Shown piece after piece: positions 1,690-44,349 of a stretch of 61,425 nt of DNA. Source of the DNA: Octopus bimaculoides (Eukaryota). Made by a program: the position numbers and the translations under genes. The stretch lies in contig NC_069009.1 of the NCBI RefSeq assembly GCF_001194135.2, positions 10,240,530 to 10,301,954 on the forward strand, read 5' to 3'. The notes under the pieces are model-generated. The model was not told the DNA's origin and did no database searches. It worked only from the letters and a program-made list of their open reading frames with translations. Position 1 is the stretch's first letter. Each line of letters begins with the position of its first letter.

Positions 1690-2270
1690 TCATCATCATC
1701 ATAATGCGATGACTGTTTTTTATGCTGGCATGGGTTGGACGGTTTGACAGGAGCTGGCCAGCTAAAGATCTACTTGGGTTCCATATCTCTTTTCACATGG
1801 TTTCTATGGCTGGATGCCCTTCCTAATGACAACCACTTTATACAGTGTACAGGTTGCTTTTCTGCAGCAGCGAAATGGATATTTGCGTGGCACCAGCATG
1901 AGTCATTTTTACGTGGCACCGGCACCAACCATCCCACAAGATTAGGTTCTCTCAGGTGAAGAGAGATGCAGGGGGCATACTTGTATGCATGGACAACCAA
2001 GACTTAGCTGGACATATCTTCTCAAGTCCAGCAAACCACCAAACCCTCGGTCCCTTGTCATCCCCTCCCCAATACCTGAAGCTCCTTTCTCACCACTTTA
2101 TTGCACACCTTCCTTCGTCGACCCCTTCCACACATTCCTGCCACAATTAGAGATCAGCACATCTTGATGCAGTTATCTTCATCCATGTGCATTACATAAC
2201 CATACCAGTGCAGTCTTCTCTCTTGCGCACAACATCTGATGCCTCATAAACCCAGTTTTTCTCTCAAATC
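1690..2270 (-). mobile_element. RTE-clade LINE 3' fragment with (CAT)n tail
   Basis: Reverse complement of the RTE 3' end seen at 12900-13130 (taggaagggcatccagc...agaaacc), ending at the (CAT)n tract near 1675-1700. Confidence 0.65.
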
Positions 2271-2945
2271 CACTTAATTATGGAAGCCTTATTGATCTGT
2301 TTGGATATGTCTGTGTGGCGTTGATTTAGTTGTTATGTCTGAAAACATTACCAAGTTCTTCTGTGTTGGCACTGAACATTTAGAACGGCTGCTCTTCATC
2401 GAAATTGCAACAACAAAATATTTGGAACAGATTCTCTCAATGACATACTGAAATAGTGTCAAAGATTTGTAAACTAGACATATCAAACCCCTTTAAAATC
2501 AAAAGAATTTTTTTAAATATATAAGAAAAACAGGAAAACAACTTCTTTTTGATGAAGAATATTGTTTATTTACATTGAGATGAATCACACAACTCTATAA
2601 TGTATGATGTAATATATATTTTAGAATATGTTCTGCCACTGTAGCTTGTACAATGTAATATATATTTCAAGCATTGGATTATGAATATAATTTAGTAATA
2701 AATTCAATTAGGGTTAAATATACAAAATATATTCAAGTAAAGGAAATAAACATTTGAAAGATTTGTTGAATCCGAGACATACAAGGTGAGACAACATAAG
2801 AATTTTAAATGGAGATTTTGTGTTACTTTTATAAGATTGCTAACATGTAAGAGTAACAAGTTGAATCAGATAATGTCATCATTGTGTGTGTAGGAGGAGA
2901 TGCTATTCCAGTGGAAAACATACACTGTCTCTAGTTTACTAATAT

Positions 2946-3237: not shown

Positions 3238-5210
3238 TTATCTCTCATAATAAAAGAATCCATCAAAACGGTTATCTAAACATCCGTAAATCATGATGAA
3301 ATAATCCGAAACATGTATGGCCTTGATGTGGCAGACTTCAATTTCTTGAGAGCTGAGAAAGATTTCGCATTTGCTGTCTACAGATATTTGATGGATATTG
3401 TTATTAAAATCTGATATGTAAATATTTTCGCCATGGATGGTCAAGGATTTGTTGAAAATGTTTGGAAATGGTTCATCACTTTGAATCATTAGTTGTTGAC
3501 TCCTAACCAAATTGTCTCTATACCAACATAAATCGTAATGATCTTCCTTGTATTTAAGAACGACGATGTCTTCATTCGATGTCACACCCAATGCTACAAC
3601 CTTCCCCTCCTTCCCTAAATTCACTCGACCCATATACTCATACATTTCACCATAAATGTGAAGTATGTCTGCATATGACACAAACGGAGTATTACTACAT
3701 TCATTTCGAGCGTCTTCGAACACACATACCAGATTATTGTCATTCTTTTTGTACATTAAATTGTATGGTTTTTCAGTTGTGATCTTTTTTAAAAGACACA
3801 GATCTGTATTGAAGAACATCAGTTGTTTATCATCACGAATGAGGACTACAAAGGATTCATCGGTCCATTGACATATATCTTGAGCTTCTTTTTCAAATGT
3901 TTGACTGTAAAGCAGATGACCGTCTCCCCTGGTGACCATGAGAGTACATTTATGGAGGAGCACGACAATACTATTGTCTTGTAGCATAATTAGCTTAAAA
4001 GCATTAAGAAAAGAAAACATCAAATTTGAATCTAGTAAACCAGATAGGGAAAATGAAAGCGGAAACATTGCTGTTCTGTGTGGCAGTCTTCTCACTGATA
4101 TTTCATCAATTACTGACATACTCTCCGCTATGTAATTACCACGTCTCACTTCTAATCTACCTTTAGCAACTATTTCGTTTGATGTACATCTTCTTTCTCC
4201 TCCATCGTCACTGTTTTTAAGTTTATTAAATAATTCATTACTGAACATTTCCTTGTTCTTCTGAGATGTAATAGAAGGGAAATGAAGCCCAGAATCAAGA
4301 TTTGATAATGACATAGATTCCAGAACCTTCAGATGGTCCCCATCAATTTTTATAGTATCACATTCAATCATGTTGATATGTACACACCAGTAAATATTTC
4401 CCATTTTTCTCCATATTCCACCATAAGGTACTCGACTTTCCCAAACTTTATATTTCTCCAAGTCTTGTGGCTTCAATTGAAATATTTCTCGTCTGTTAGG
4501 GACTGTGATCAATATATTTGTTTCTCCAGTAAAACATACACCACCAACCAAACTTCCAAAATCTCTGTAACATAGCAACTTCCCGTCTTCATCAAATAGT
4601 TTAACATTTCCACTATTGGCTTTTTCGCACACAACTGTCTTTCCTTCATCAGAGATATCGATATCTTTTACTTGAACAGGACAATTGTTTATTTGTAACC
4701 GTGAAACGGGGAATTTTTCCCGATTAATCTTGTACAAACCTTCAATATACAAGTACGAGTCATAGCTTGCAACAAATCTCGGACCTTTACAGTTAATACT
4801 GTTGAAATCCAACGCACGTTTATAATGCCTTTCATTTAAGAATATTCTCTTGTATTCACCGTTCTGCAACAATGAGACAATACGATACTTTTTCGTGTTT
4901 TCATAGATGTTCTTCCGTCCAGTAATGTACAAATAAGTATCATCGGTTGCCATAGAGGTGTGTCGGGAATAAATGCTGTGCTTAAATAAATATAAATATT
5001 GCCCGTTAGGGTTCAGAATAGTGATGAACCTGTCGGTATTGACGATGATGTTGTCATTAGCAATAACTGAGATATGGGTGATATTGTATCTGTAGCGCTT
5101 CCAAAATAAGTCTATTTCTCTCATAATACGGACAGCTGACTGTATTTCATCGATATATATATAAAACAGGCAGTTTTCAATTTCGGGTATGAAGGCACCA
5201 CCATCAACAT

Positions 5211-5288
<78 letters not shown>

Positions 5289-8081
5289 ACACCAATAGAT
5301 TGTCGGATCGACAAGCGATACAATTGTATCTATTTTCTGTGTGGTAAGTTGCCAAGAACAATGGAAATTCCACTTTTAATGTTAACAGTTGATAGTTATT
5401 GGTCGTTATAACCAATGTGTTTGATCGCCAGCAACACATATGTCTTGGGACAACATTATTTAACTTGATAGAGTCAACAAGTTGACCATCAAAAGTTAAT
5501 ATCTTAATGTTTTGATTTGTGCTGTCATATAGAGCAACCAGGTTATTTTCTGTAATAACCAAACAACCAATCTCCATTGGATGTTTATCTCCAAAACTTT
5601 GAGGGACAACAACTTCATGAGCTTTATCAGAAACTGTGAGATCTTGTAGATACAATCTGGAAGACAACATTTCACTGAGACTGATGTTTCTAGAAAATAC
5701 ATCTACCAGATCGATGAACATGTTAATTTGACTGCTTGTAACGTGATCTCTCACTAGCAAGTCATGTTCATTTACAGCAAACATGCGGCTGTTGTCGATC
5801 AAATGAACACACATGTTATCAATACATCCACCATAGAGATTGGAGGGTGTTTTCACTTGGGACAGCAAAACACTGGGGACTATCTTACTGCTGATGATGC
5901 TTCTCCTCCTTCGCCACCTGCTGCTCCTGATGGTCTTGTAGAGGAATACTGTTTTCTTACCAACAATTAATAGCTTTAGTGTTTCGTTTTCTAATGATAA
6001 TGATTTCATTATAAAAGGAATATTAATTCTACGAATTCTTTCAACTTGATTACAATTTCTAATGGCTGAAATATCTAAATAAGATGGTTTATCGCAATAA
6101 CAAATAATGCGACCTTCACCCAGCTTACACACACGTACATAAGGCTGGTTTAATGATACACTTCTGACTGTCTTTGATAAGTTTCCGATGATCCTTAGTT
6201 GCTTCTCTCGAGGTAATGTGACACCTATCTGATTAGAATTCCATCGACATATATCTGTAGCTGTAGACGGCAGCGGTAATCTGGACACAATGTCTCCTTC
6301 ATTGGAAATGTATAACAAACAGTCATTATATATGTTGGACACCACCAACTGTCCATTCGCCAGTTGACATATTTCGGCAATGAGAAGATTGTCATTCTCT
6401 TTTTCTTCGAGACGTATATTTAAATTTCTATTATAAGGATTTTTAAAGGTTACATGAGAGTCTGACCAGTCATGGTACTTGTAAAGAAGAATCCGACTGC
6501 GTAGATCGTCTAGGACATAAGCTGTTCCTTGGAAAACAGCAGAGTGATAGCAAAAGTTTGAAGGAAGTTTCAGCTGCCATTTCCTTTGTCCAGTTGTATT
6601 GTAACATGTCATCAAAGACTCTCTCCTGAAGATAACAAAGAAATATAATGTGTCTGTGAAGACATGATGAGGGTAGCCATTGAACTCAATGTGTTTCTTG
6701 GAAAGCTCTTCACCAAAGCTTGAATAAAATAACAAGTTATGTTTCCGTTTGTCAACAACTACAAAATTAATTGGAGTAGCAGCAATGGTGACATTATCAT
6801 GTTCCAATGAAATTCTGTTTACAATGTCAACATGATCCTTTTTAATCAATAAAATATGTACCTCCACTTTACCTTCACTGGTGGTCAGAGCCAAACACCT
6901 ATTTGATATCATGTGACACATTTGAGTGTAATTGTTTCCGACGTCTATTAAATCACCTTTAATTAATTGTGGACAGGTAATATACTGAAGTTTCCTGTCC
7001 TCACTAAAAAGGACAAGAAATCTGTTTGAATCCATTCTACAAAAGACAGAAGGCTGGAGTTTAAATGTTAAACATTTTCCACCAAACTGTTGCCCTTCGT
7101 CAGTAACTAATATAGCTTTTAGATCCCGATATATAATTACTATTGAAGAGGCTGACATAGGTAGAATCGTTGTAATGTTGGAGGGATCATCAATATGGAT
7201 TTGGTTTATTAAGCTCGGGATATGGTCTTGGTGATGGTAAGACAGCTTAGGCCAAAAATCTTCATTTGTCCTAATAATATGCACAAGACCAAAACGGTCA
7301 ATCAAGTAAATATTATCTGTGCCCACACAAATATATCGAGCTTTTATCCCAATTTCTCTTTGTGACACAGAACCGTTCGGTGAAATCCTGTAAATTACAT
7401 TTCCATGCACAGCGTAAGAATAATTTCGATATACATTGAGGTCTATTGGAATATCGATGGAATGGGTCTTCAACTGAAACAAGTGTCTGCCATCTATTGT
7501 GTAACAGCTAATTCTATTTATATTTGCCAAGGCTACTAAGATATGATACTGTGGACCAACTGCTATTTTTCCAACTATTTCTTTCATACTAAATTTTTCT
7601 TCAACTTTATTTGTATCCCAGTCTATGAGATATATTGTCTTACTAAACATTTCAGTACCTACAAATGTAGAATGTTTGAAATAAGAAATTGTAAAGAAAC
7701 TATAATCCAGAGATTTTATGTGGAAACTTGTTGGATTAATGAAAACTATTTTCTTACGGAATGGAATTGTGGCTAAAACAGTGTCTTCACCAATTGTTGT
7801 CATGTCTGTGACATTAGAAGAACAATGAAAATCAAAATCACCGCCTGTTGTGGCACAACTTATCCTCAAATCTGTTGAATAGGTTACGATTCCATTGCGG
7901 ATTTCAACGATTCTTAAAACTGTGTTCATGCTCTTGGAATCATTATCAGAGTCTTTGGGCTGCAATATTTTGGACACAGCTGAGCAACGGGGACGGAATT
8001 TAGATGAATGCGACTTCATAATACTTTTACCATCAAGACGTGGTATCTGCATGTAGTGATCGTCAATTGAACTTGGTTCAT
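3238..8081 (-). CDS. Exon F (terminal, 4,844 nt): about six tandem diverged NHL/TolB-like beta-propeller modules
   Basis: Uninterrupted 1,604-aa ORF extends upstream to a strong acceptor (ttttatttctgttgttattgttattcag|AT GAA CCA) in phase 1, matching the RING exon donor. Recurring motif [DE]G.L...L....DIC.W....V.....KQL at about 7090, 6297, 5487, 4583 and 3920, with a weaker copy near 7800. Confidence 0.85.
5212..5286 (-). repeat. Perfect (AGT)25 microsatellite inside the CDS, encoding Ser25
   Basis: (act)25 on +, translated as LLVC-S25-NVDGG. Confidence 0.97.
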
Positions 8082-9639
8082 CTGAATAACAATAACAACA
8101 GAAATAAAATTATATTAAATTTCCAAAAGACATGAATGGGTTATATTAATTTGTAACAACAACTTCCTACATAATTCAAGTCACAAAAAATCAAATCTTC
8201 CCAATTTAACTAAAACATTGCACAACATTCCTAAAACACCATTTTGAAGACACTTTCCATTTCATTTCTTGTAGATAAACAAGGAAATAGCGACATCAGT
8301 GGGGTTACAGGCTGAAAACACTGATATACACCAGTGGAGTTTAGAACTGAAGAGCGATATCTGTGATGTTCTGGCAATGTATACCTTGACTACTTTAATT
8401 GTGGTCTACAGATGTACAACCACATGCTGTACAATGAGGAGATATCATATTGTAACCTGACTGCTACTACACTCTACCCCAAAAAACAAAAGTTAACTGT
8501 GTGATGTTTAAAAAGATGGAAGAATTGAATATTTGACGGGTTAGATCTGTGTGTTTTTCACTGAGGCTGTGACCAGCTGTGTATTGTTATATATATATAT
8601 ATATATATATACATAAAAGACCTGAGTAGCAATTACACAACCAGTGGTAAGATTTCTGATCTCTCTCTCTCTCTCTCCCTGACCACATGATAAACATTAG
8701 AAATTAGATAAGCCCCAGCACCAACTCTATCAATGAATGAAGTAAATAAAAATCGAGTAAACAAAACAGAAATTGCCTTTTTCCGATTTAGAGAAAACAA
8801 TTAATTGTTGATAATTAATAGTCAATAACTTGCTGTACTCCATTTTCTTAATTGCTGAGATAATTCTAAATGCTCTGACTTTAAATACCAATTAGTGTTA
8901 TACAAATATACAGATATATAGGAAACTATCGACAGCAATATAAAACCTTGTAATTACCCATGTGATCTTTTAGCAATTACTAGTGTTTACAGCCACCCAG
9001 AAACCTGTAATTATCCATTATCTCAGATGAGAGTTTGTCAGTGGAACTCCTACTTCAACATGTATGACTTTGATGTTTTTGTAAGTAATGCTGTCTTTAA
9101 TTAGCAGCCATTGCTACCATCATCACTACATTGTCATCATTTAACGTCCATTTTCCATTCTGGCAGGGTTTGTACGTTTTGTCAGGGCCTGGCTAGGGAG
9201 AAGAATGCACCAGGCTTCACTGTCTGATTTGGCAGGATTTTACAGATGGATACTTTTCCTAACACCAACAAACTTACAGTGTGATCTGGATCCACAAGCA
9301 TTGGTGGGGGTCACCAAAGAACTTGATTGAAACATGTGTCTTGTAGAAGAGATACATGGTTACCCAGTGAGAGGGGGAGGGCAAGAGAAAGAGTGAGAGT
9401 GAGTAACCAAGAAATGTTAATAAATCATTAAGCACTCTGTGACCTCACAAACTATTCAGACTCAGTCTCCATCATTTACTGTTGTCATCCTCCACCTCTC
9501 CCTCCAATCACTTTTTTTTATCCTTTCAGTCTTTGCATTCTGATTCTCCTTCTGTAATCCCTTCTTCTCTCCTCCTAAACATGTCACTTTCAGTGAACCA
9601 ACACATCATAGAGTAGTGAGGACTTTCTAATATCATGGA

Positions 9640-13778: not shown

Positions 13779-13918
13779 CAACTCTGCTTTTGCTCTCTAT
13801 ACATGTTTTACACTCGGGGCATCTTTGAAGTTGAATTTTGCCACAATCTTCGCATACCACAGTATGTCCACAGGGTTGTAACTCCACGTTGGCTTCATTC
13901 TCTTCACAAAGCATACAT
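13779..13918 (-). CDS. Exon E: MIB/IAP-type RING-HC zinc finger
   Basis: tttgtccacag|A TGT ATG...GTT G|gtaaga. CMLCEENEANVELQPCGHTVVCEDCGKIQLQRCPECK has spacing Cx2Cx11CxHx3Cx2Cx7Cx2C. Confidence 0.92.
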
Positions 13919-18547: not shown

Positions 18548-18723
18548 TGTGGTGGGAATAATACTTTTAATTTTCCTTCCAAATCTGCATTCCCAACGAG
18601 GTCCAATGGAGCTATATTCTTATTGTTTCTCCAGTAAAAGTTTGCTCCCTGGTGGGCTAGATAGCTAGCAACTCCTACACCAGAAAGTCTCTCTTCGATC
18701 GTCAACTCAAGCTTAGCACAGTA
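18548..18723 (-). CDS. Exon D: last degenerate ankyrin and linker, MIB-like
   Basis: tttgtcatttgtag|TAC TGT GCT...CCA CCA CA|gtaaat. YCAKLELTIEERLSGVGVASYLAHQGANFYWRNNKNIAPLDLVGNADLEGKLKVLFPP resembles the MIB segment [29 protein letters not shown]. Too short for the supplied ORF track. Confidence 0.88.
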
Positions 18724-20498: not shown

Positions 20499-20708
20499 CT
20501 CATCTAAAATGTGAATGTGTTCCATCTCAGAATGAAACATCTCCTCCCTTACAGCAAGGTGCAAACAATTATTGCCATCATTGTCGACAGCATGTATGTT
20601 TGCTCCATGTGTAATCAATTTATGGATTATTCCGAAGTGGGCCTTGGAGACGGCTTCCAGTAATGGTGTCCTTTTCTTATGGTTCTCAATATCCAGTTTC
20701 ACTGAATC
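20499..20708 (-). CDS. Exon C: about two ankyrin repeats, MIB-like
   Basis: ttttacttccacaaag|GAT TCA GTG...GAT GAG|gtaagt; 210 nt. DSVKLDIENHKKRTPLLEAVSKAHFGIIHKLITHGANIHAVDNDGNNCLHLAV. Confidence 0.92.
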
Positions 20709-21533: not shown

Positions 21534-22680
21534 TATGAGATTCAAACAAAAGTCTTGTCCTATTGTCTAGATGAAATTTTAGACGACATTCATTGAATTA
21601 TTGCCTTTTGTTATCCCTCATGGAATGAAACAACGAGTAGTTTATATTTTGTTCGAGTTAAAAAACTATTGTCCACAATCTTCTTTGATATTCACCCTCC
21701 AATATTCGTCCCAACTAAGGAATATGCTTTACTCTACGAGTTTCATAAAGGTGTCAATGGAAGTGTAACAGCAAAGTCAATTCAAAGCACTTCAGGAGAT
21801 GATGTAGTGAGTGAAAGAAGTAGCAGAAGGTGGTTTTTCCATATCTCAAGTGGGAAATTCAGCTTAGATGACGAGCCAAAGAAGGGCCGTCCAAAGCTCT
21901 CGATTCCCATGGGCTGGATGCTGTTATTACATCAAACCCTGTCACTAGTGCTAAAGAACTCGCCAAGAAATTTAAGGTTAGCCACATGACTATCCTACAT
22001 GAACTGAAAAGAATTGGAACGGTTTCATTAGCTGGAAAATGGGTCCCACATAAACTGTCTCCAGAGAATCAGCAACAATAAATTACACATGTTGTGAATC
22101 ACAGCTTACACAACAACAACAACAACAACAGATACCATTTTTGGGTGAGCTGATGAGCATTGGATCCTTTATGCCGTCAGCAATGGATCCTTCATGGAAG
22201 CAGACCTCCTCAGCAACAAAGAGGACAACTTTGGCCAAAGAACATGTTGAGTGTAACTTGGGATATTCAAGGCATTATCCATTGCAAACTGTTATACAAT
22301 AATCAAACAAACAATGCCAATCTCTATTGCAATCCACTTTGTTGATTGAAAGCGGTTTTGGACAAAATTCTCCTGTCCTTAGTCAATAGAAATGGGGTCG
22401 TTCTGCATCACAATAAAACACACCCACAACTGTACAATTGAGTAAAGATCTCTTAGAAGTGCTCCAATGGGAGAAATTGCTTCATCCTCCATATTCTCCT
22501 GACCTTGCACCTTCTGATTATCACATGTTTAGGGGATTACAGAATCATTTAAATGGGATTAGGCTGACATTGAGGGAAGGGGCTGCAAGTGAATCGGTAT
22601 TGAACTTTACATCAAAACCTAAAGAATCTTACTAGTGCAGCATCTATAAGCTTGTTGACAGATGGAATGAGGTCCTACCA
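21534..22680 (+). mobile_element. Degenerate mariner transposon
   Basis: LYEFHKG...RRWF...LDDEPKKGRP, WVPHKL and HPPYSPDLAPSDYHMFRGLQNHL motifs with frameshifts. Confidence 0.9.
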
Positions 22681-29644: not shown

Positions 29645-29681
29645 CTGGGACAGCATCAAAGTCACCACATCATAGCATTGC
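29645..29681 (-). CDS. Exon B (37-nt micro-exon) completing an ankyrin repeat
   Basis: tttttttgtctttcctctttgtataactttcag|G CAA TGC TAT GAT GTG GTG ACT TTG ATG CTG TCC CAG|gttagt. Phase 2 to 0 bridges exons A and C exactly (E-QCYDVVTLMLSQ). Confidence 0.85.
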
Positions 29682-30254: not shown

Positions 30255-31146
30255 TGAAGGTGGGGACCCAAAACAACCCAGAATTTTGCAATATATTTTC
30301 TTTGCTTACTTTTACATATTAACACTATTATCACCGTCAAAGTATTCTCCATTTGAAGCAATGCATCGACCCAGACATGTTTTCCACTATTTGTAGCAGT
30401 GCTGCTTTTTGAAGCCTCCATCATATTTTTCCTTGCCTCTGCCACATCTGCAAATTCTGTAGCACCAGCTTTTGTCACTATTGATGACCTTTGATAAAAG
30501 ATACGGATTGACTTCCAGCTTGTTCTTTCAGTTCACCAAATGCATTCAACCATGACTGCTTTTGATCTTCTGTGAGCAAGTGAGGCATAAATTTTGCTGC
30601 AACACTTTTCATTTGCTATTCCTTGCTCAAAATTCCTTGACAGGAGTTCCAGGACTCACCAATCATATCAACAAGTTCGTCAATTGTTCGGTGACAGTCT
30701 TCCAAAATCAGTTCATGAATTTTCATGATGTTTTCATTTATTTGGGAGCTCGATGGCTGCCCTGAATGAGGTTCGTCCTCAATCGACAAGTGACCATTCG
30801 AAAAGCATGGAAACCACTCGTGAACTTGTGTTTTGCTCATGGCAGTGTCCTTCCAAGTTGTTTGAAGCACGACAACTGTTTCGGCTGCTGTTTTCTCCAG
30901 CAGAAAACAGAATTTCATGGAAGCATGCTGTTCCTTCATTTCAGCCATTGCAAAAATCGATGAACAGGGGAGGAGCCCTGCAAAACAAAGATGCACCACA
31001 TGGTAATAGGACCACACCCAAAGTTGCCGGTTGGCAGACTGATGCCTGAGTATCACATCAAGTGGCTTCTAGCAGCAGAAGCCTAAACTTCAATGGCTTT
31101 GCCCCACAGAGAACGTTTCCGGTTACTTTTGGGTACCCCCGCGTAT
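30255..31146 (-). mobile_element. Internally deleted mariner with degenerate TIRs
   Basis: MKFCFLLEKTAAET...EDEPHSGQPS, VINSDKSWCY (ITGDESW-like) close to RCIASNGEYFDGD. TIR-like ends GGGGACCCAAAACAACCCAGAA and GGGGTACCCAAAAGTAACCGGAA. Confidence 0.85.
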
Positions 31147-31916: not shown

Positions 31917-34783
31917 TCTTGAACTGCCAGGTGTAAAGGTGTGTTACCGCGTTCGTCCATTTTATTGGCATCGATGCCATTCTGTTGTAGGAGAGGTTTT
32001 ATAGTGTCTGTTTGTCCATTAAAAGAGGCATGATGTAGAGGTGTCCAACCACGGATGCTCACAGCACTGACATCAGTGCCATGTTGTTGTAGGAGAAGTT
32101 GAATACTGCCTGTGTGTCCGTTCTGACAGGCAAGATGTAGTGGTGTCCAACTATGGATGGTCACAGCCCTGACATCAGTGCCATTCTGTTGTAGTAGAAG
32201 TTTTATAGTGTCTGTGTGTCCCTTATAAGAGGCAAGATGTAGAGGTGTCCAACCATCGATGGTCACAGCCCTGACATCAGTGCCATTTTGTTGTAGGAGA
32301 AGTTGAATAGTGTCTGTGTGTCCATTCTGAGAGGCAAGATGTAGAGGTGTCCAACCATCGTTGGTCACAGCCCTGACATCAGTGCCATTTTGTTGTAGGA
32401 GAAGTTGAATACTGTCTGTGTGTCCATGCTGAGAGGCAAGATGTAGAGGTGTCCAACTATGGATGCTCACAGCACTGACATCAGTGCCATTCTGTTGTAG
32501 TAGAAGTTTTATAGTGTCTGTGTGTCCGTTATAAGAGGCAAGATGTAGAGGTGTCCAACCATCGATGGTCACAGCCCTGACATCAGTGCCATTTTGTTGT
32601 AGGAGAAGTTGAATAGTGTCTGTGTGTCCATAATAAGAGGCAAGATGTAGAGGTGTCCAACCACAGTTGTTCACAGCCCTGACATCAGTGCCATTTTGTT
32701 GTAGGAGAAGTTGAATAGTGTCTGTGTGTCCATTCTGAGAGGCAAGATGTAGAGGTGTCCAACCATCGTTGGTCACAGCCCTGACATCAGTGCCATTTTG
32801 TTGTACGAGAAGTTGAATAGTGTCTGTTTGTCCATTCTGAGAGGCAAGATGTAGAGGTGTCCAACCATCGTTGGTCACAGTCCTGACATCAGTGACATTT
32901 TGTTGTAGGAAAAGTTGAATAGTGCCTGTGTGTCCATTCCGAGAGGCAAGATGTAGAGGTGTCAAACCTGTGTTGGTCACAGCCCTGACATCAGTCCCAT
33001 TTTGTTGTAGGAGAAGTTGAATAGTGTCTGTGTGTCCATTCTGAGAGGCAAGATGTAGAGGTGTCCAACCACCGTTGGTCACAGTCCTGACATCAGTGCC
33101 ATTTTGTTGTAGGAGAAGTTGAATAGTGTCTATGTGTCCATTCTGAGAGGCAAGATGTAGAGGTGTCGAACCACGGTTGTTCACAGCCCTGACGTCAGTG
33201 CCATTTTGTAGTAGGAGAAGTTTAATTGTGTCTCTGTGTCCATTATAAGAGGCAAGATGTAGAGGTGTCCAACCATCGTTGTTCACAGCACTGACATCAG
33301 TGCCATTTTGTTGTAGGAGAAGTTGAATAGTGTCTGTGTGTCCATTCTGAGAGGCAAAATCTAGAGGTGTCGAACCACGGTTGTTCACAGCCCTGACATC
33401 AGTGCCATTTTGTTGTAGGAGAAGTTCAATTGTATCTGTGTGTCCATTCTGAGTGGCAAGATGTAGAGGTGTCCAACCATCGTTGGTCACAGCCCTGACA
33501 TCAGTGCCATTTTGTTGTAGGAGAAGTTTTATAGTGTCTGTGTGTCCATTCCGAGAGGAAAGATGTAGCGGTGTCAAACCTGTGTTGGTCACAGCCCTGA
33601 CATCAGTGCCATTTTGTTGTAGGAGAAGTTGAATAGTGTCTCTGTGTCCATTCTGAGAGGCAAGATGTAGAGGTGTCCAACCATCGTTGGTCACAGCCCT
33701 GATATCAGTGCCATTTTGTTGTAGTAGAAGTTGAATAGTGTCTGTGTGTCAATTCTGAGAGGCAAGATGTAGAGGTGTCCAACCACCGTTGGTCACAGCC
33801 CTGACATCAGTGCCATTTTGTTGTAGGAGAAGTTGAATAGTGTCTGTGTGTCCATGAAAAGAGGCAACATGTAGAGGTGTCCAACCATCGTTGGTCACAG
33901 CACTGACATCAGTGCCATTTTGTTGTAGGAGAAGTTGAATAGTGTCTGTGTGTCCATTCTGAGAGGCAAGATGTAGAGGTGTCGAACCACGGTTGTTCAC
34001 AGCCCTGACACCAGTGCCATTTTGTTGTAGGAGAAGTTGAATAGTGTCTGTGTGTCCATTCCGAGAGGCAAGATGTAGAGGTGTCGAACCACGGTTGTTC
34101 ACAGCCCTGACATCAGTGCCATTTTGCTGTAGGAGAAGTTCAATTGTGTCTGTGTGTCCATTCTGAGAGGCAAGATGTAGAGGTGTCCAACCATCGTTGG
34201 TCACAGCCCTGACATCAGTGCCATTTTGTTGTACGAGAAGTTGAATAGTGTCTGTGTGTCCATTATAAGAGGCAAGATGTAGAGGTGTCCAACCATCGTT
34301 GGTCACAGCACTGACATCAGTGCCATGTTGTTGTAGGAGAAGTTGAATAGTGTCTCTGTGTCCATTATAAGAGGCAAGATGTAGAGGTGTCGAACCACGG
34401 TTGTTCACAGCCCTGACATCAGTGCCATTTTGTTGTAGGAGAAGTTTTATAGTGTCTGTGTGTCCATTCTGAGAGGNNNNNNNNNNATTTTGTTGTAGGA
34501 GAAGTTTTATAGTGTCTGTGTGTCCATTCTGAGAGGCAGGATGTAGAGGTGTCCAACCATCGTTGGTCACAGCCCTGACATCAGTGCCATTTTGTTGTAG
34601 GAGAAGATGAATAGTGTCTGTGTGTCCATTATAAGAGGCAAGATGTAGAGGTGTCGAACCACGGTTGTTCACAGCCCTGACATCAGTGCCATTTTGTTGT
34701 AGGAGAAGTTTTATAGTGTCTGTGCGTCCATGGATAGAGGCAACATGTAGAGGTGTGCAACCTTGGTTATTTTTCTGAGTGAC
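31917..34783 (-). CDS. Exon A: ankyrin tandem-array exon, containing one in-frame TGA and a 10-N gap
   Basis: Acceptor tttatcttttttag|GTC ACT CAG (VTQKNNQGCTPLHVAS), donor CAA GA|gtaagt. The two supplied ORFs (33749..34672 and 31913..33694) are in the same frame and separated only by a TGA. Confidence 0.85.
31958..34771 (-). repeat. Coding tandem repeat: 27 x 102 bp (34-aa ankyrin units)
   Basis: Period 102 (ggcaag at 32231 and 32333). Consensus TNDGWTPLHLASQNGHTDTIQLLLQQNGTDVRAV. Length 2,814 = 27x102 + 60 nt of gap overlap. Confidence 0.95.
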
Positions 34784-35012: not shown

Positions 35013-35401
35013 TTTCACACAAATATATATACATACGTGCTTTATATTTTAACTGATCACTTGTTTATGTATTTTTGTGTATATATACGTTTATGTGTGT
35101 GTATATTTGTGTATGTATGTATAGGTCTCATTATCATNNNNNNNNNNNNNNNNNNNNNNNNNNNNNNNNNNNNNNNNNNNNNNNNNNNNNNNNNNNNNNN
35201 NNNNNNNNNNNNNNNNNNNNNNNNNNNNNNNNNNNNNAGTAAGTGCAATTTGATCTTTCTTATTCCTGCCACCACCACAACCAGGGTCAATATGTCATAA
35301 TGGGGCTAATCACAAACACCACTTCTACCAACACAACCGTTGTCAAAACGTCGCTTTTAGGACAAGATAAACATCATAATAAAGAGCAACTCCTTTATCA
35401 T

Positions 35402-42998: not shown

Positions 42999-43207
42999 GG
43001 AGAGCTGGCAGTTTCGTTAGCACGGCGGGCGAACCGCTTAACGGTATTTCTTCTGCGCTACATTCTGTGTTCAAATTCCACTGAGTTCGAGTTTGCCTTT
43101 CATCCTTTCGATAAAACAATTATCAAATGAATACTAGGTTCGATGTAATCGATTAGTCCCCTCCCCTAAAATGTCAGGCCTTGTGCCTATAGTAAAAAGG
43201 ATCATTA
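42999..43207 (+). mobile_element. tRNA-derived SINE
   Basis: gagctggcag...ttagcacggcgggcgaa...gttcaaattcc...gcctttcatcctttcg. Confidence 0.8.
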
Positions 43208-44349
43208 CTAATCAACATAAATAAAAAAATATAGTAAAAAAAACATAGACATAAATTTTTGTGTGANNNNNNNNNNATTTCTTCTGCGCTACATTCTGTG
43301 TTCAAATTCCACTGAGTTCGAGTTTGCCTTTCATCCTTTCGATAAAACAATTATCAAATGAATACTAGGTTCGATGTAATCGATTAGTCCCCTCCCCTAA
43401 AATGTCAGGCCTTGTGCCTATAGTAAAAAGGATCATTACTAATCAACATAAATAAAAAAATATAGTAAAAAAAACATAGACATAAATTTTTGTGTGAAAA
43501 GGATGAATCCATTATTCTTTTATTCCTTTACTTGTTTCAGCCATGCAGCTGTTGTCATTCTGGAGCACCATCACTAGTAATAAAAATAAAAATATGCTTT
43601 ATATTAACCATATAGGAAAGACATTTACCTTGGAAAAAGGTAGATACATATTATAATAATCTACATGGTGGAAGCCGGGCTGGTTTATTTAAGTTTAAAT
43701 AACAAAAACTAGTCTCATAATGGCCGCAATCCAGTGAATGATATAAATGAAAGATGAAGAGCAAATGCCACAACCTTGCGAGCAAAGTCCTCATTACTGT
43801 ATAACTGCGCCTCACATGCTCTCTCTCTCTCTCTCTCTCTCTCCATCTCTCTCTCTCTCTCCATCTCTCAATTTCTCACTCCTTCTCTCTTTCATACACA
43901 CACTCACAAATGCAAACAGAGACGCAAACCCGCAAGCGCAGAGCACGTCCAACACAATGTTCTACTCTTAATGGAGGCTACTCTGAAATATAAGCCCTAT
44001 ATTTCAGTTATCTCCTATAATTATTGCTATGTACTGTTTCTTATTAGTATGAATTATTTTTCCCCCTCGACGTCTTTTTTCTTCAGTCATTGGAACGCAG
44101 TCATNNNNNNNNNNNNNNNNNNNNNNNNNNNNNNNNNNNNNNNNNNNNNNNNNNNNNNNNNNNNNNNNNNNNNNNNNNNNNNNNNNNNNNNNNNNNNNNN
44201 NNNNNNNNNNNNNNNNNNNNNNNNNNNNNNNNNNNNNNNNNNNNATCAGGCACGTGTCGTCAGTAATTATTTAGGGTAGGCAGTTGGTAAAGTTTATGTA
44301 GTAAAACACACACACACAAATACACAAACATAAGCGAAACACATTTCTT

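What the first reader, a model, noticed from the sequence alone, without database searches (positions are those of the whole stretch)
31958..34771. Young ankyrin array varying mainly at DARPin-like binding positions, with shuffled half-units
Seen: 27 units share an almost invariant framework (TPLHLAS..GHTDTI.LLLQQNGTDV). Recurrent variation falls at positions 1-3 and 5 (TNDGW, NNRGS, TNTGL, TNGGW, TIDGW, SIHSW, NNCGW) and 13-14 (QN, YN, RN, YY, QH, YK, FH, FN, IH). Hairpin and helix variants recombine: NNRGS occurs with YN, RN and QN; TNDGW with QN, YN and FH. Higher-order duplications are visible (TIDGW-Y, then xIHSW-Q, twice; TNTGL-RN twice). Known: positions 2, 3, 5, 13 and 14 are those randomised in designed ankyrin libraries because they contact ligand. 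Inference: unequal crossover or conversion in one exon generates a variable binding surface, like a natural DARPin library.
Basis: partly seen in the sequence, partly recalled or inferred. Interest (0 to 1): 0.75.

Follow-up and report, generated by a model that had tools for sequence, protein, structure and literature searches.

The report
Young ankyrin-repeat array in octopus gene
One exon of an octopus ankyrin-RING gene has recently grown from about 2 to about 27 near-identical ankyrin repeats that differ mostly at the target-binding positions. This pattern is already known from fungal immune receptors, and here it rests on a gapped short-read assembly with an in-frame stop codon.

Summary
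On the minus strand, one 2.87-kb exon (31917-34783) holds 27 tandem 102-bp (34-aa) ankyrin units plus a half unit. Core units are 91% identical in DNA and 82% in protein.

The 10-N gap is in frame. Its flanks are the same 50 nt, so unit number there is unknown.

Variants shared by two or more units cluster in codons 2/3/5/13/14 (13 of 28, p=6e-5). They exceed synonymous variation per site by 3-5 fold (p=0.002-0.006). The 27 one-off changes are evenly spread and look neutral, and framework N/S is 1.0. Hairpin and helix variants are truly mosaic (Rm=9).

The gene belongs to an octopus-specific ankyrin-RING-Death family annotated 'MIB2-like'. The collinear O. sinensis locus has 2 units in this exon. 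Relatives have 1, 3 and 7, and the 7-unit relative varies at the same positions.

Best reading: a germline unequal-crossover and conversion expansion of a recognition module, with diversity kept at binding positions. This matches the highly internally conserved repeats of fungal NOD-like receptors. Nothing suggests somatic diversification. I rate it a new member of a known kind, of moderate interest. Unit count and order need long reads.

The parts
31917..34783 (-). Single coding exon holding the ankyrin array: VTQK lead-in, 27 units of 102 bp (34771-31958) and a terminal half unit. Acceptor AG at 34785-34784, donor GT at 31916-31915.
   Evidence: translation and unit table. (TRF). (Pfam Ank_2, E=2.9e-222). 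(the same acceptor and donor align with the O. sinensis exon).
34477..34486 (.). Assembly gap (10 N) inside unit 3. The 50 nt on each side are identical, so this is overlapping contig ends or a collapsed repeat. The frame is kept.
33749..33751 (-). In-frame TGA replacing the conserved Gly15 codon (GGA) of unit 10.
   Evidence: Expected stops among 27 neutral single changes = 0.62.
32060..32569 (-). Higher-order duplication at the 3' end of the array. Units 22-23 (TIDGW-YN, SIHSW-QH) are repeated as units 25-26 (TIDGW-YK, TIHSW-QN). Units 20 and 24 are identical.
   Evidence: distance matrix: u22/u25 2 differences, u20/u24 0 differences. (135-nt exact repeat at an offset of 4 units).
29645..29681 (-). 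Next exon, 37 nt, (E)QCYDVVTLMLSQ, with AG acceptor and GTTAGT donor. It completes the last ankyrin unit.
   Evidence: The same peptide occurs in the O. vulgaris 'MIB2-like' protein P0140.
20499..20708 (-). Exon coding DSVKLDIENHKK...HILDE, a C-terminal degenerate ankyrin unit of the family.
18548..18723 (-). Exon coding YCAKLELTIEERLSGVGVASYLAHQGANFY...KVLFPP.
13779..13918 (-). RING-finger exon, CMLCEENEANVELQPCGHTVVCEDCGKIQLQRCPECKTCI.
   Evidence: Pfam zf-C3HC4_3, E=8.4e-10.

Best explanation
The array is the target-recognition module of a member of an octopus-specific ankyrin-RING-Death family, which is presumably a family of E3 ubiquitin ligases.

In this lineage, one internal 102-bp ankyrin unit of a single exon was amplified in the germline from about 2 to about 27 copies. 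The likely mechanism is unequal crossover or slippage between units. Repeated conversion between units kept the framework nearly identical and shuffled half-units.

Differences were retained, and probably favoured, at the hairpin (positions 1-5) and at the end of helix 1 (positions 13-14). These form the concave binding face. The product is therefore a long solenoid with a patchwork binding surface. This is the same evolutionary regime as the highly internally conserved repeats of fungal NOD-like receptors.

Shown: the array, its youth, its mosaicism, and the excess of amino-acid variation at the binding positions.

Inferred: the selection, the E3 and recognition role, and any immune function.

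The copy in this assembly may be decaying or non-functional, given the stop codon and the neutral-looking recent changes.
For: **Array and fold.**

**Recent expansion.** O. sinensis contig L001 is collinear with window 35128-16468, and the aligned intron blocks are 81-93% identical. Its homologous exon has 2 units plus a half. Relatives have 1 unit (L002), 3 (P0285) and 7 (P0027).

**Unequal-crossover signature.** The end units are the most diverged, at 14-24 differences against about 8.7.

**Conversion and mosaicism.** 116 of 374 site pairs are incompatible and Rm=9. Identical multi-nucleotide hairpin haplotypes are joined to three different helix haplotypes within 42 nt.

**Concentration at binding positions.**
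- pN is 0.273 at codons 2/3/5/13/14 against 0.058 elsewhere.
- 13 of 28 shared variants fall in these 5 codons (p=6e-5).
- Non-synonymous states per site there are 1.24 against 0.43 synonymous (p=0.006). For shared states only, the ratio is 4.7 (p=0.002).

**Independent replicate.** The 7-unit array of P0027 varies only at 1, 2, 3, 5, 10, 12, 13, 14 and 32-33 among its six internal units. It differs from the window consensus mainly at the same positions.

**Gene looks real.** Five exons have consensus splice sites. There is a RING exon. dN/dS is 0.38 against L001 in the non-repeat exons.

**Family architecture.** ANK-RING-Death.
Against: - Framework N/S is 1.01. The 27 singleton changes have N:S = 21:6, against a neutral expectation of 3.08, and are evenly spread. 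Recent purifying or diversifying selection is therefore not detectable.
- There is an in-frame TGA.
- No N-terminal exons and no Death exon of the family are found in the window.
- The selection tests count states among recombining paralogous units. Multi-nucleotide codon changes may not be independent events.
- Unit order and number rest on a short-read scaffold with a gap inside the array. There are 33 exact repeat pairs of 60 nt or more, up to 135 nt.
- No expression, population or binding data exist.
Confidence: 0.6

Rival explanations
1. This is a neutral young duplication or a pseudogene. A few founder units that already differed at weakly constrained surface positions were amplified by unequal crossover. 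The array has since drifted without selection and is not a functional recognition surface.
For: - Framework N/S is 1.01 and singleton N:S is 21:6, equal to the mutational expectation.
- One stop codon is observed against 0.62 expected under neutrality.
- Core-residue hits occur: H9D/L10F, L10P, G28V.
- N-terminal and Death exons are not found.
- The same positions are the most variable in unrelated ankyrin arrays.
Against: - If founders were old units under ordinary constraint, shared framework changes should be mostly synonymous. Instead shared synonymous states are rare, at 5 against 12 non-synonymous states in just 5 codons (ratio 4.7, p=0.002).
- Codons 3 and 13 carry 2-3-nucleotide changes while synonymous sites barely differ.
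- The paralogue P0027 repeats the pattern.
- The remaining 950 codons are open, splice sites are intact, and flanking exons show dN/dS 0.38.
Confidence: 0.25
2. This is an assembly artefact. The unit number, unit order, the stop codon and part of the apparent shuffling were created by short-read assembly of a highly similar tandem repeat, possibly also mixing two haplotypes.
For: - The window has 21 N gaps, one of them inside the array with 50-nt identical flanks.
- Exact intra-array repeats of 135, 110, 104 and 103 nt are present.
- Illumina assemblies of such repeats were shown to omit or create repeats (PMC12222747).
Against: - Hairpin and helix variants lie within 42 nt of each other, which is shorter than a read. 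Their combinations therefore cannot easily be chimeric.
- An artefact would not place variation at the binding positions.
- A paralogue from another species' assembly shows the same kind of array.
- This rival can change the count and order, but not the existence or nature of the array.
Confidence: 0.1
3. This is programmed or somatic diversification, a true 'natural DARPin library' in the manner of lamprey variable lymphocyte receptors, with unit content rearranged in somatic cells.
For: Only the mosaic structure of the units.
Against: - No unit-like donor cassettes lie anywhere else in the 61-kb window.
- The germline exon is already a complete spliced ORF, not an incomplete receptor gene.
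- The encoded protein is cytoplasmic in type (RING, Death).
- Germline copy-number differences between relatives explain the data.
Confidence: 0.02

Closest known systems
Highly internally conserved (HIC) ANK, TPR and WD repeats of fungal NOD-like receptors (Paoletti 2007; Dyrka et al. 2014, PMC4986451; PMC12222747)
   Same: - Tandem repeats that are near-identical in DNA within one gene.
- Concerted evolution by recombination between units.
- Repeat-number differences between relatives.
- A handful of hypervariable positions on the concave hairpin and inner-helix face, with an excess of non-synonymous change.
- Occasional alleles with stop codons.
- Short-read assemblies are unreliable for them.
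   Different: - The host is an animal (octopus), not a fungus.
- The array is attached to RING and Death domains rather than a NACHT or NB-ARC domain.
- The unit is 34 aa.
- Mean pairwise protein identity is 82%, just under the 85% cut-off those authors used.
- Allelic polymorphism and function are untested here.
Designed ankyrin repeat proteins (DARPin libraries; Binz et al. 2003, cited from my own knowledge)
   Same: - A consensus-like invariant framework with diversity at positions 2, 3, 5, 13 and 14. The register is confirmed by alignment to DARPin D12.
- The model superposes on DARPins at TM 0.83-0.91 and rmsd 1.0-1.6 A.
   Different: - This array is natural and far longer, with 27 units against 2-3 internal units.
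- It has an extra residue after helix 2.
- DARPin position 33 corresponds to the invariant V34 here.
- Positions 1, 17, 21 and 32 also vary.
- There is no evidence that the diversity is generated on demand.
Mind bomb E3 ligases (MIB1/MIB2), the name given by automatic annotation to the octopus relatives
   Same: An ankyrin block followed by a C-terminal C3HC4 RING. MIB1 ankyrin repeats are among the PDB sequence matches.
   Different: No MIB/HERC2, ZZ or REP domains in any relative scanned. A Death domain is present instead. The name reflects ANK+RING similarity only.
Lamprey and hagfish variable lymphocyte receptors
   Same: A repeat-protein solenoid whose binding face is a mosaic of unit variants.
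   Different: VLRs are leucine-rich repeats assembled somatically from flanking cassettes into an incomplete germline gene. Here there are no cassettes, and the germline exon is complete.

Membership tests
Ankyrin repeat (Pfam PF00023/PF12796) | Sequence match to the ankyrin profiles, including the TPLH motif | tested here: met
   Ank_2 E=2.9e-222 and Ank E=1.7e-167, 17 stretches. PDB matches to ankyrin-1 and DARPins, E=1e-211 to 1e-122.
Ankyrin repeat (Pfam PF00023/PF12796) | Helix-turn-helix plus hairpin solenoid fold, 33-residue period | tested here: met
   The alignment-based AlphaFold2 model has pLDDT 97.8, with helices at unit positions 7-14 and 17-25. It matches Foldseek hits 4qfv, 4gpm and DARPins at TM 0.83-0.91. 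The period is 34, not 33, with one extra residue after helix 2.
Highly internally conserved (HIC) repeat domains, sensu Dyrka et al. 2014 | At least 85% identity between repeats over at least 100 aa | tested here: inconclusive
   Core units are 91.4% identical in DNA but 82.1% in protein. That is just below the published protein cut-off (PMC4986451).
Highly internally conserved (HIC) repeat domains, sensu Dyrka et al. 2014 | Hypervariable positions on the binding face with an excess of non-synonymous change | tested here: met
   (p=6e-5, 0.006 and 0.002). Positions are mapped. These are counting tests only, with no recombination-aware codon model.
Highly internally conserved (HIC) repeat domains, sensu Dyrka et al. 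2014 | Repeat-number polymorphism between alleles | not testable with these tools
   Only one assembly of this locus is available. Between relatives, the homologous exon holds 1, 2, 3, 7 and 27 units.
Highly internally conserved (HIC) repeat domains, sensu Dyrka et al. 2014 | Attached to a NACHT or NB-ARC nucleotide-binding domain (NLR architecture) | tested here: not met
   Window exons and family proteins show ANK, zf-C3HC4_3 and Death only. N-terminal exons of the window gene were not found.
Mind bomb (MIB1/MIB2) E3 ligases | N-terminal MIB/HERC2 and ZZ domains before the ankyrin block | tested here: not met
   Pfam scan of P0027, P0285, P0289, P0122 and P0143 found none.
Mind bomb (MIB1/MIB2) E3 ligases | C-terminal C3HC4 RING finger | tested here: met
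   Window 13779-13918, zf-C3HC4_3 E=8.4e-10.
Somatically assembled repeat receptors (VLR type) | Flanking donor cassettes and an incomplete germline gene | tested here: not met
   No unit-like sequence outside the array in the 61-kb window. The germline exon is complete.

The most novel reading that the evidence does not exclude
Octopuses possess a lineage-specific family of ankyrin-RING-Death proteins that act as germline-encoded, rapidly diversifying intracellular recognition and ubiquitin-ligase sensors. These would be functionally comparable to TRIM5-type restriction factors or fungal NLRs. Their specificity would be renewed by expansion, contraction and shuffling of a near-identical ankyrin array, with strong repeat-number and sequence polymorphism between individuals.
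Probability: 0.2. Interest if true: 0.7.

Novelty: new member of a known kind. Interest (0 to 1): 0.4.

Why it matters
If the array is expressed and polymorphic, it would be an animal counterpart of the fungal highly-conserved-repeat receptors. It would show that concerted evolution plus diversifying selection on an ankyrin binding face also operates in a cephalopod, in an ankyrin-RING-Death architecture that suggests ubiquitin and cell-death signalling.

It would also point to a candidate innate-immune gene family in a group whose immune recognition repertoire is poorly known. In my searches of the held literature I found no description of this family.

If it is only a decaying recent duplication, it is an ordinary example of tandem repeat turnover.

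Tried and rejected
- **Single-sequence AlphaFold2.** A model of 7 units gave a beta-solenoid with no PDB match. I discarded it as a hallucination. The alignment-based model replaced it.
- **Third protein search.** A 5-unit query returned only generic short ankyrin proteins at no more than 49% identity. No near-identical protein is in the database. The window's own gene model and its species could not be identified.
- **Locus look-ups.** P0027, P0140 and the 1604-aa ORF product were not on record. No DNA-level comparison with the 7-unit paralogue was possible.
- **Missing exons.** Searches for the family's N-terminal exons and Death-domain exon in the window found nothing, even at E up to 5.
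- **Higher-order repeat periodicity.** No general period was found. Only the local 3-4-unit duplication at the 3' end is present.
- **VLR-like donor cassettes.** None.
- **True Mind bomb membership.** Rejected.
- **A-to-I RNA editing of the TGA to TGG.** I considered this but did not pursue it. It would give Trp at a conserved Gly and cannot be tested here.
Full report
**What is there.** Tandem Repeats Finder reports a 102-bp array at 31975-34476 (24.5 copies, 90% matches, score 4045). It continues after a 10-N gap at 34487-34762. The array codes on the minus strand.

In register, the array consists of 26 complete 34-aa units, one unit interrupted by the gap, and a terminal half unit. The consensus unit is TNDGWTPLHLASQNGHTDTIQLLLQQNGTDVRAV. 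The finding's limits, 34771 and 31958, are exactly the first base of unit 1 and the last base of unit 27.

The whole array lies in one exon, 31917-34783. It is bounded by a tttttag acceptor and a GTAAGT donor. Core units (2-26) are on average 91.4% identical in DNA and 82.1% in protein. Two units are identical.

Pfam scores the translation as ankyrin repeats (Ank_2, E=2.9e-222). PDB sequence matches are ankyrin-1 and DARPins. An alignment-based AlphaFold2 model of five units has pLDDT 97.8. It places helices at unit positions 7-14 and 17-25 and superposes on consensus ankyrins and DARPins at TM 0.83-0.91.

The alignment to DARPin D12 fixes the register. Positions 2, 3, 5, 13 and 14 here correspond to the DARPin randomised positions. 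The 34th residue is an insertion after helix 2, and DARPin position 33 corresponds to the invariant V34. The list of randomised DARPin positions is from my own knowledge of Binz et al. 2003.

**The gap, tested first.** The 50 nt before the Ns (34427-34476) are identical to the 50 nt after them (34487-34536). On the coding strand, the unit runs through codon 27 (...LLLQQN). After the Ns it restarts at codon 12 (SQNGH...).

- As written, the stretch is 81 + 10 + 71 = 162 nt and stays in frame.
- Merging the overlap gives one intact unit, TNDGWTPLHPASQNGHTDTIKLLLQQNGTDVRAV.
- Any number of whole units could also be missing without changing the frame.

So the frame is safe, but continuity and unit count are not. 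The window has 21 N gaps in all. The array contains 33 exact internal repeat pairs of 60 nt or more, up to 135 nt. A study that compared Illumina and long-read assemblies of similar repeats found that short-read assemblies omit or create repeats (PMC12222747). Unit number and order are therefore provisional.

Unit 10 has an in-frame TGA at 33749-33751 where all other units have the Gly15 codon. Several single units carry changes in core residues: TPLDF, TPLHP, G28V and L23F. Positions 17 (T/R/I), 21 (Q/K/E/H) and 32 (R/S) also vary recurrently. Position 21 lies in the outer helix, not on the binding face.

**Distribution of variation.** I split the variant states among the 25 core units into two classes: singletons (seen in one unit, hence recent) and shared (seen in 2 or more units). 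The five DARPin-equivalent codons are 2/3/5/13/14.

| Measure | Value | Comparison | p |
|---|---|---|---|
| Pairwise non-synonymous diversity (pN), five codons, units 2-25 | 0.273 | 0.058 elsewhere | – |
| Singletons falling in the five codons | 4 of 27 | 4.0 expected | 0.58 |
| Singleton N:S | 21:6 | mutational expectation 3.08 | – |
| Shared states falling in the five codons | 13 of 28 | – | 6e-5 |
| Non-synonymous states per site, five codons | 1.24 | 0.43 synonymous array-wide | 0.006 |
| Same ratio, shared states only | 4.7 | – | 0.002 |
| Framework non-synonymous / synonymous, per site | 1.01 | – | – |

Codons 3 and 13 show two- and three-nucleotide changes (GAT to CGT or ACA, CAG to TAT), while synonymous sites barely differ.

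My reading is this. Differences at the binding positions are older than, or have been protected from, the homogenisation that erased differences elsewhere. Their excess over synonymous change argues for selection favouring diversity there. Since the last round of amplification, point mutations have accumulated as if neutral. One stop codon is observed where 0.62 would be expected among 27 neutral changes. These are counting tests on recombining units, not a proper codon model.

**Shuffling.** 116 of 374 pairs of shared sites show all four gametes. The minimum number of recombination (or recurrent-mutation) events within the 102-nt unit is 9. The NNRGS hairpin is one identical 15-nt haplotype that differs from the consensus at four bases. 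It is joined to QN, RN and YN. The TAT (Tyr13) codon is joined to five different hairpins. Hairpin and helix sites are no more than 42 nt apart, so these combinations are unlikely to be assembly chimeras. The end units are the most diverged, which is the usual signature of unequal crossover. A local duplication (units 22-23 repeated as 25-26, and units 20 and 24 identical) is present, but there is no general higher-order period.

**The gene.** Homology to octopus proteins and consensus splice sites define further minus-strand exons:

- 29645-29681
- 20499-20708
- 18548-18723
- 13779-13918, a C3HC4 RING (Pfam E=8.4e-10)

All relatives found are octopus proteins annotated 'E3 ubiquitin-protein ligase MIB2-like' or similar. 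Their real architecture is N-terminal ankyrins, a variable ankyrin block, a RING and a Death domain. They have no Mind-bomb-specific domains. A full-library HMMER search with one relative found 70 representatives at E<=1e-30. No N-terminal exon and no Death exon of the family were found in the window. Similarity to the O. sinensis locus stops at 35128, next to a 100-N gap.

**How young is the array?** O. sinensis contig VCDQ01005252.1 (L001) is collinear with window 35128-16468, and the aligned intron blocks are 81-93% identical. The homologous exon there has the same acceptor and donor but only two diverged units plus the half unit. An O. bimaculoides paralogue has one unit (L002). P0285 has three and P0027 has seven.

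P0027's six internal units are identical from position 15 to 31. They vary only at 1, 2, 3, 5, 10, 12, 13, 14 and 32-33. Its consensus differs from the window consensus at nine positions, six of them hypervariable. This is an independent replicate of the pattern from another assembly.

Non-repeat exons give dN/dS = 0.38 between the window and L001, so the lineage has been under some constraint. Oddly, dS in these exons (0.40) exceeds the intron divergence. The window's units also resemble P0027's units (25/34) more than those of the collinear L001 exon (16-18/34). That hints at conversion between paralogues.

**Interpretation.** The best-supported account is a recent germline expansion and continuing conversion of one ankyrin unit within a single exon of an ankyrin-RING(-Death) gene. 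Amino-acid diversity was kept at the concave binding face (confidence 0.6).

- The main rival is a neutral young duplication, or a pseudogene, whose pattern merely reflects weak constraint at surface positions (0.25). It fits the neutral singletons, the stop and the missing exons. It does not fit the excess of non-synonymous over synonymous shared states or the replicate in P0027.
- Assembly artefact can alter count, order and perhaps the stop, but not the nature of the array (0.1).
- Somatic diversification has no support. There are no donor cassettes in 61 kb, and the germline exon is complete (0.02).

**Comparison with the known.** The same regime is described for fungal NLR ankyrin, TPR and WD repeats: near-identical repeats, repeat-number change, and a few hypervariable positions on the binding face under positive selection (PMC4986451). 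That paper found such repeats to be rare in metazoans, at 0.8% of ANK/TPR/WD repeats. A sea-urchin LRR case is mentioned in PMC12222747.

Eight other internally conserved ankyrin arrays among the proteins retrieved here are most variable at positions 13, 3, 5, 1, 2, 10, 14 and 21. The positional pattern is therefore generic to this kind of array.

What is new is the host (an octopus) and the partner domains (RING and Death instead of a NOD domain). I found no paper on this octopus family in the held library. I therefore class it as a new member of a known kind, with moderate interest. That interest is tempered by the assembly quality and by signs that this particular copy may be decaying.

Noticed in passing
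window 3241-8109 (minus strand): An uninterrupted 1623-codon ORF lies downstream of the RING exon on the same strand. It has no Pfam hit at E<=0.01 and no meaningful PDB sequence match. It contains a poly-Ser run encoded by the 5211-5288 trinucleotide repeat. It could be a giant exon of an unknown gene or an unclassified mobile element.
   Followed up: partly
window 30619-31068 (-) and 21597-21986 (+): Two fragments carrying the Mos1/mariner transposase HTH_48 domain (E=5.9e-7 and 2.3e-9) sit inside introns of the ankyrin-RING gene.
   Followed up: partly
window 20499-20708 and 18548-18723 vs L001 21584-21793 and 23602-23775: Coding exons are more diverged from the collinear O. sinensis locus (dS 0.40; exon C dS 0.60) than the surrounding introns (10-19% divergence). 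The window's repeat units are also closer to the paralogue P0027 than to the collinear exon. This suggests exon-level conversion between paralogues.
   Followed up: partly
window 35128-35237 and upstream to 61425: Similarity to the O. sinensis locus ends at 35128, next to a 100-N gap. The two upstream family exons seen in L001 (10001-10126 and 12840-12968) have no counterpart anywhere in the window. This could be a scaffold misjoin, a missing sequence, or a 5'-truncated gene.
   Followed up: partly
window 43046-43498: A 231-bp unit is present twice (95% matches) around another 10-N gap at 43267-43276. This may be the same overlapping-contig-end signature as in the ankyrin array.
   Followed up: no
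L002 12193-12470 vs window 2073-2351: A 279-bp segment is 96% identical between the window and an O. bimaculoides chromosome record that is similarly rich in N gaps. This is probably a young interspersed repeat. It is weak evidence that the window comes from O. bimaculoides or a close relative.
   Followed up: no
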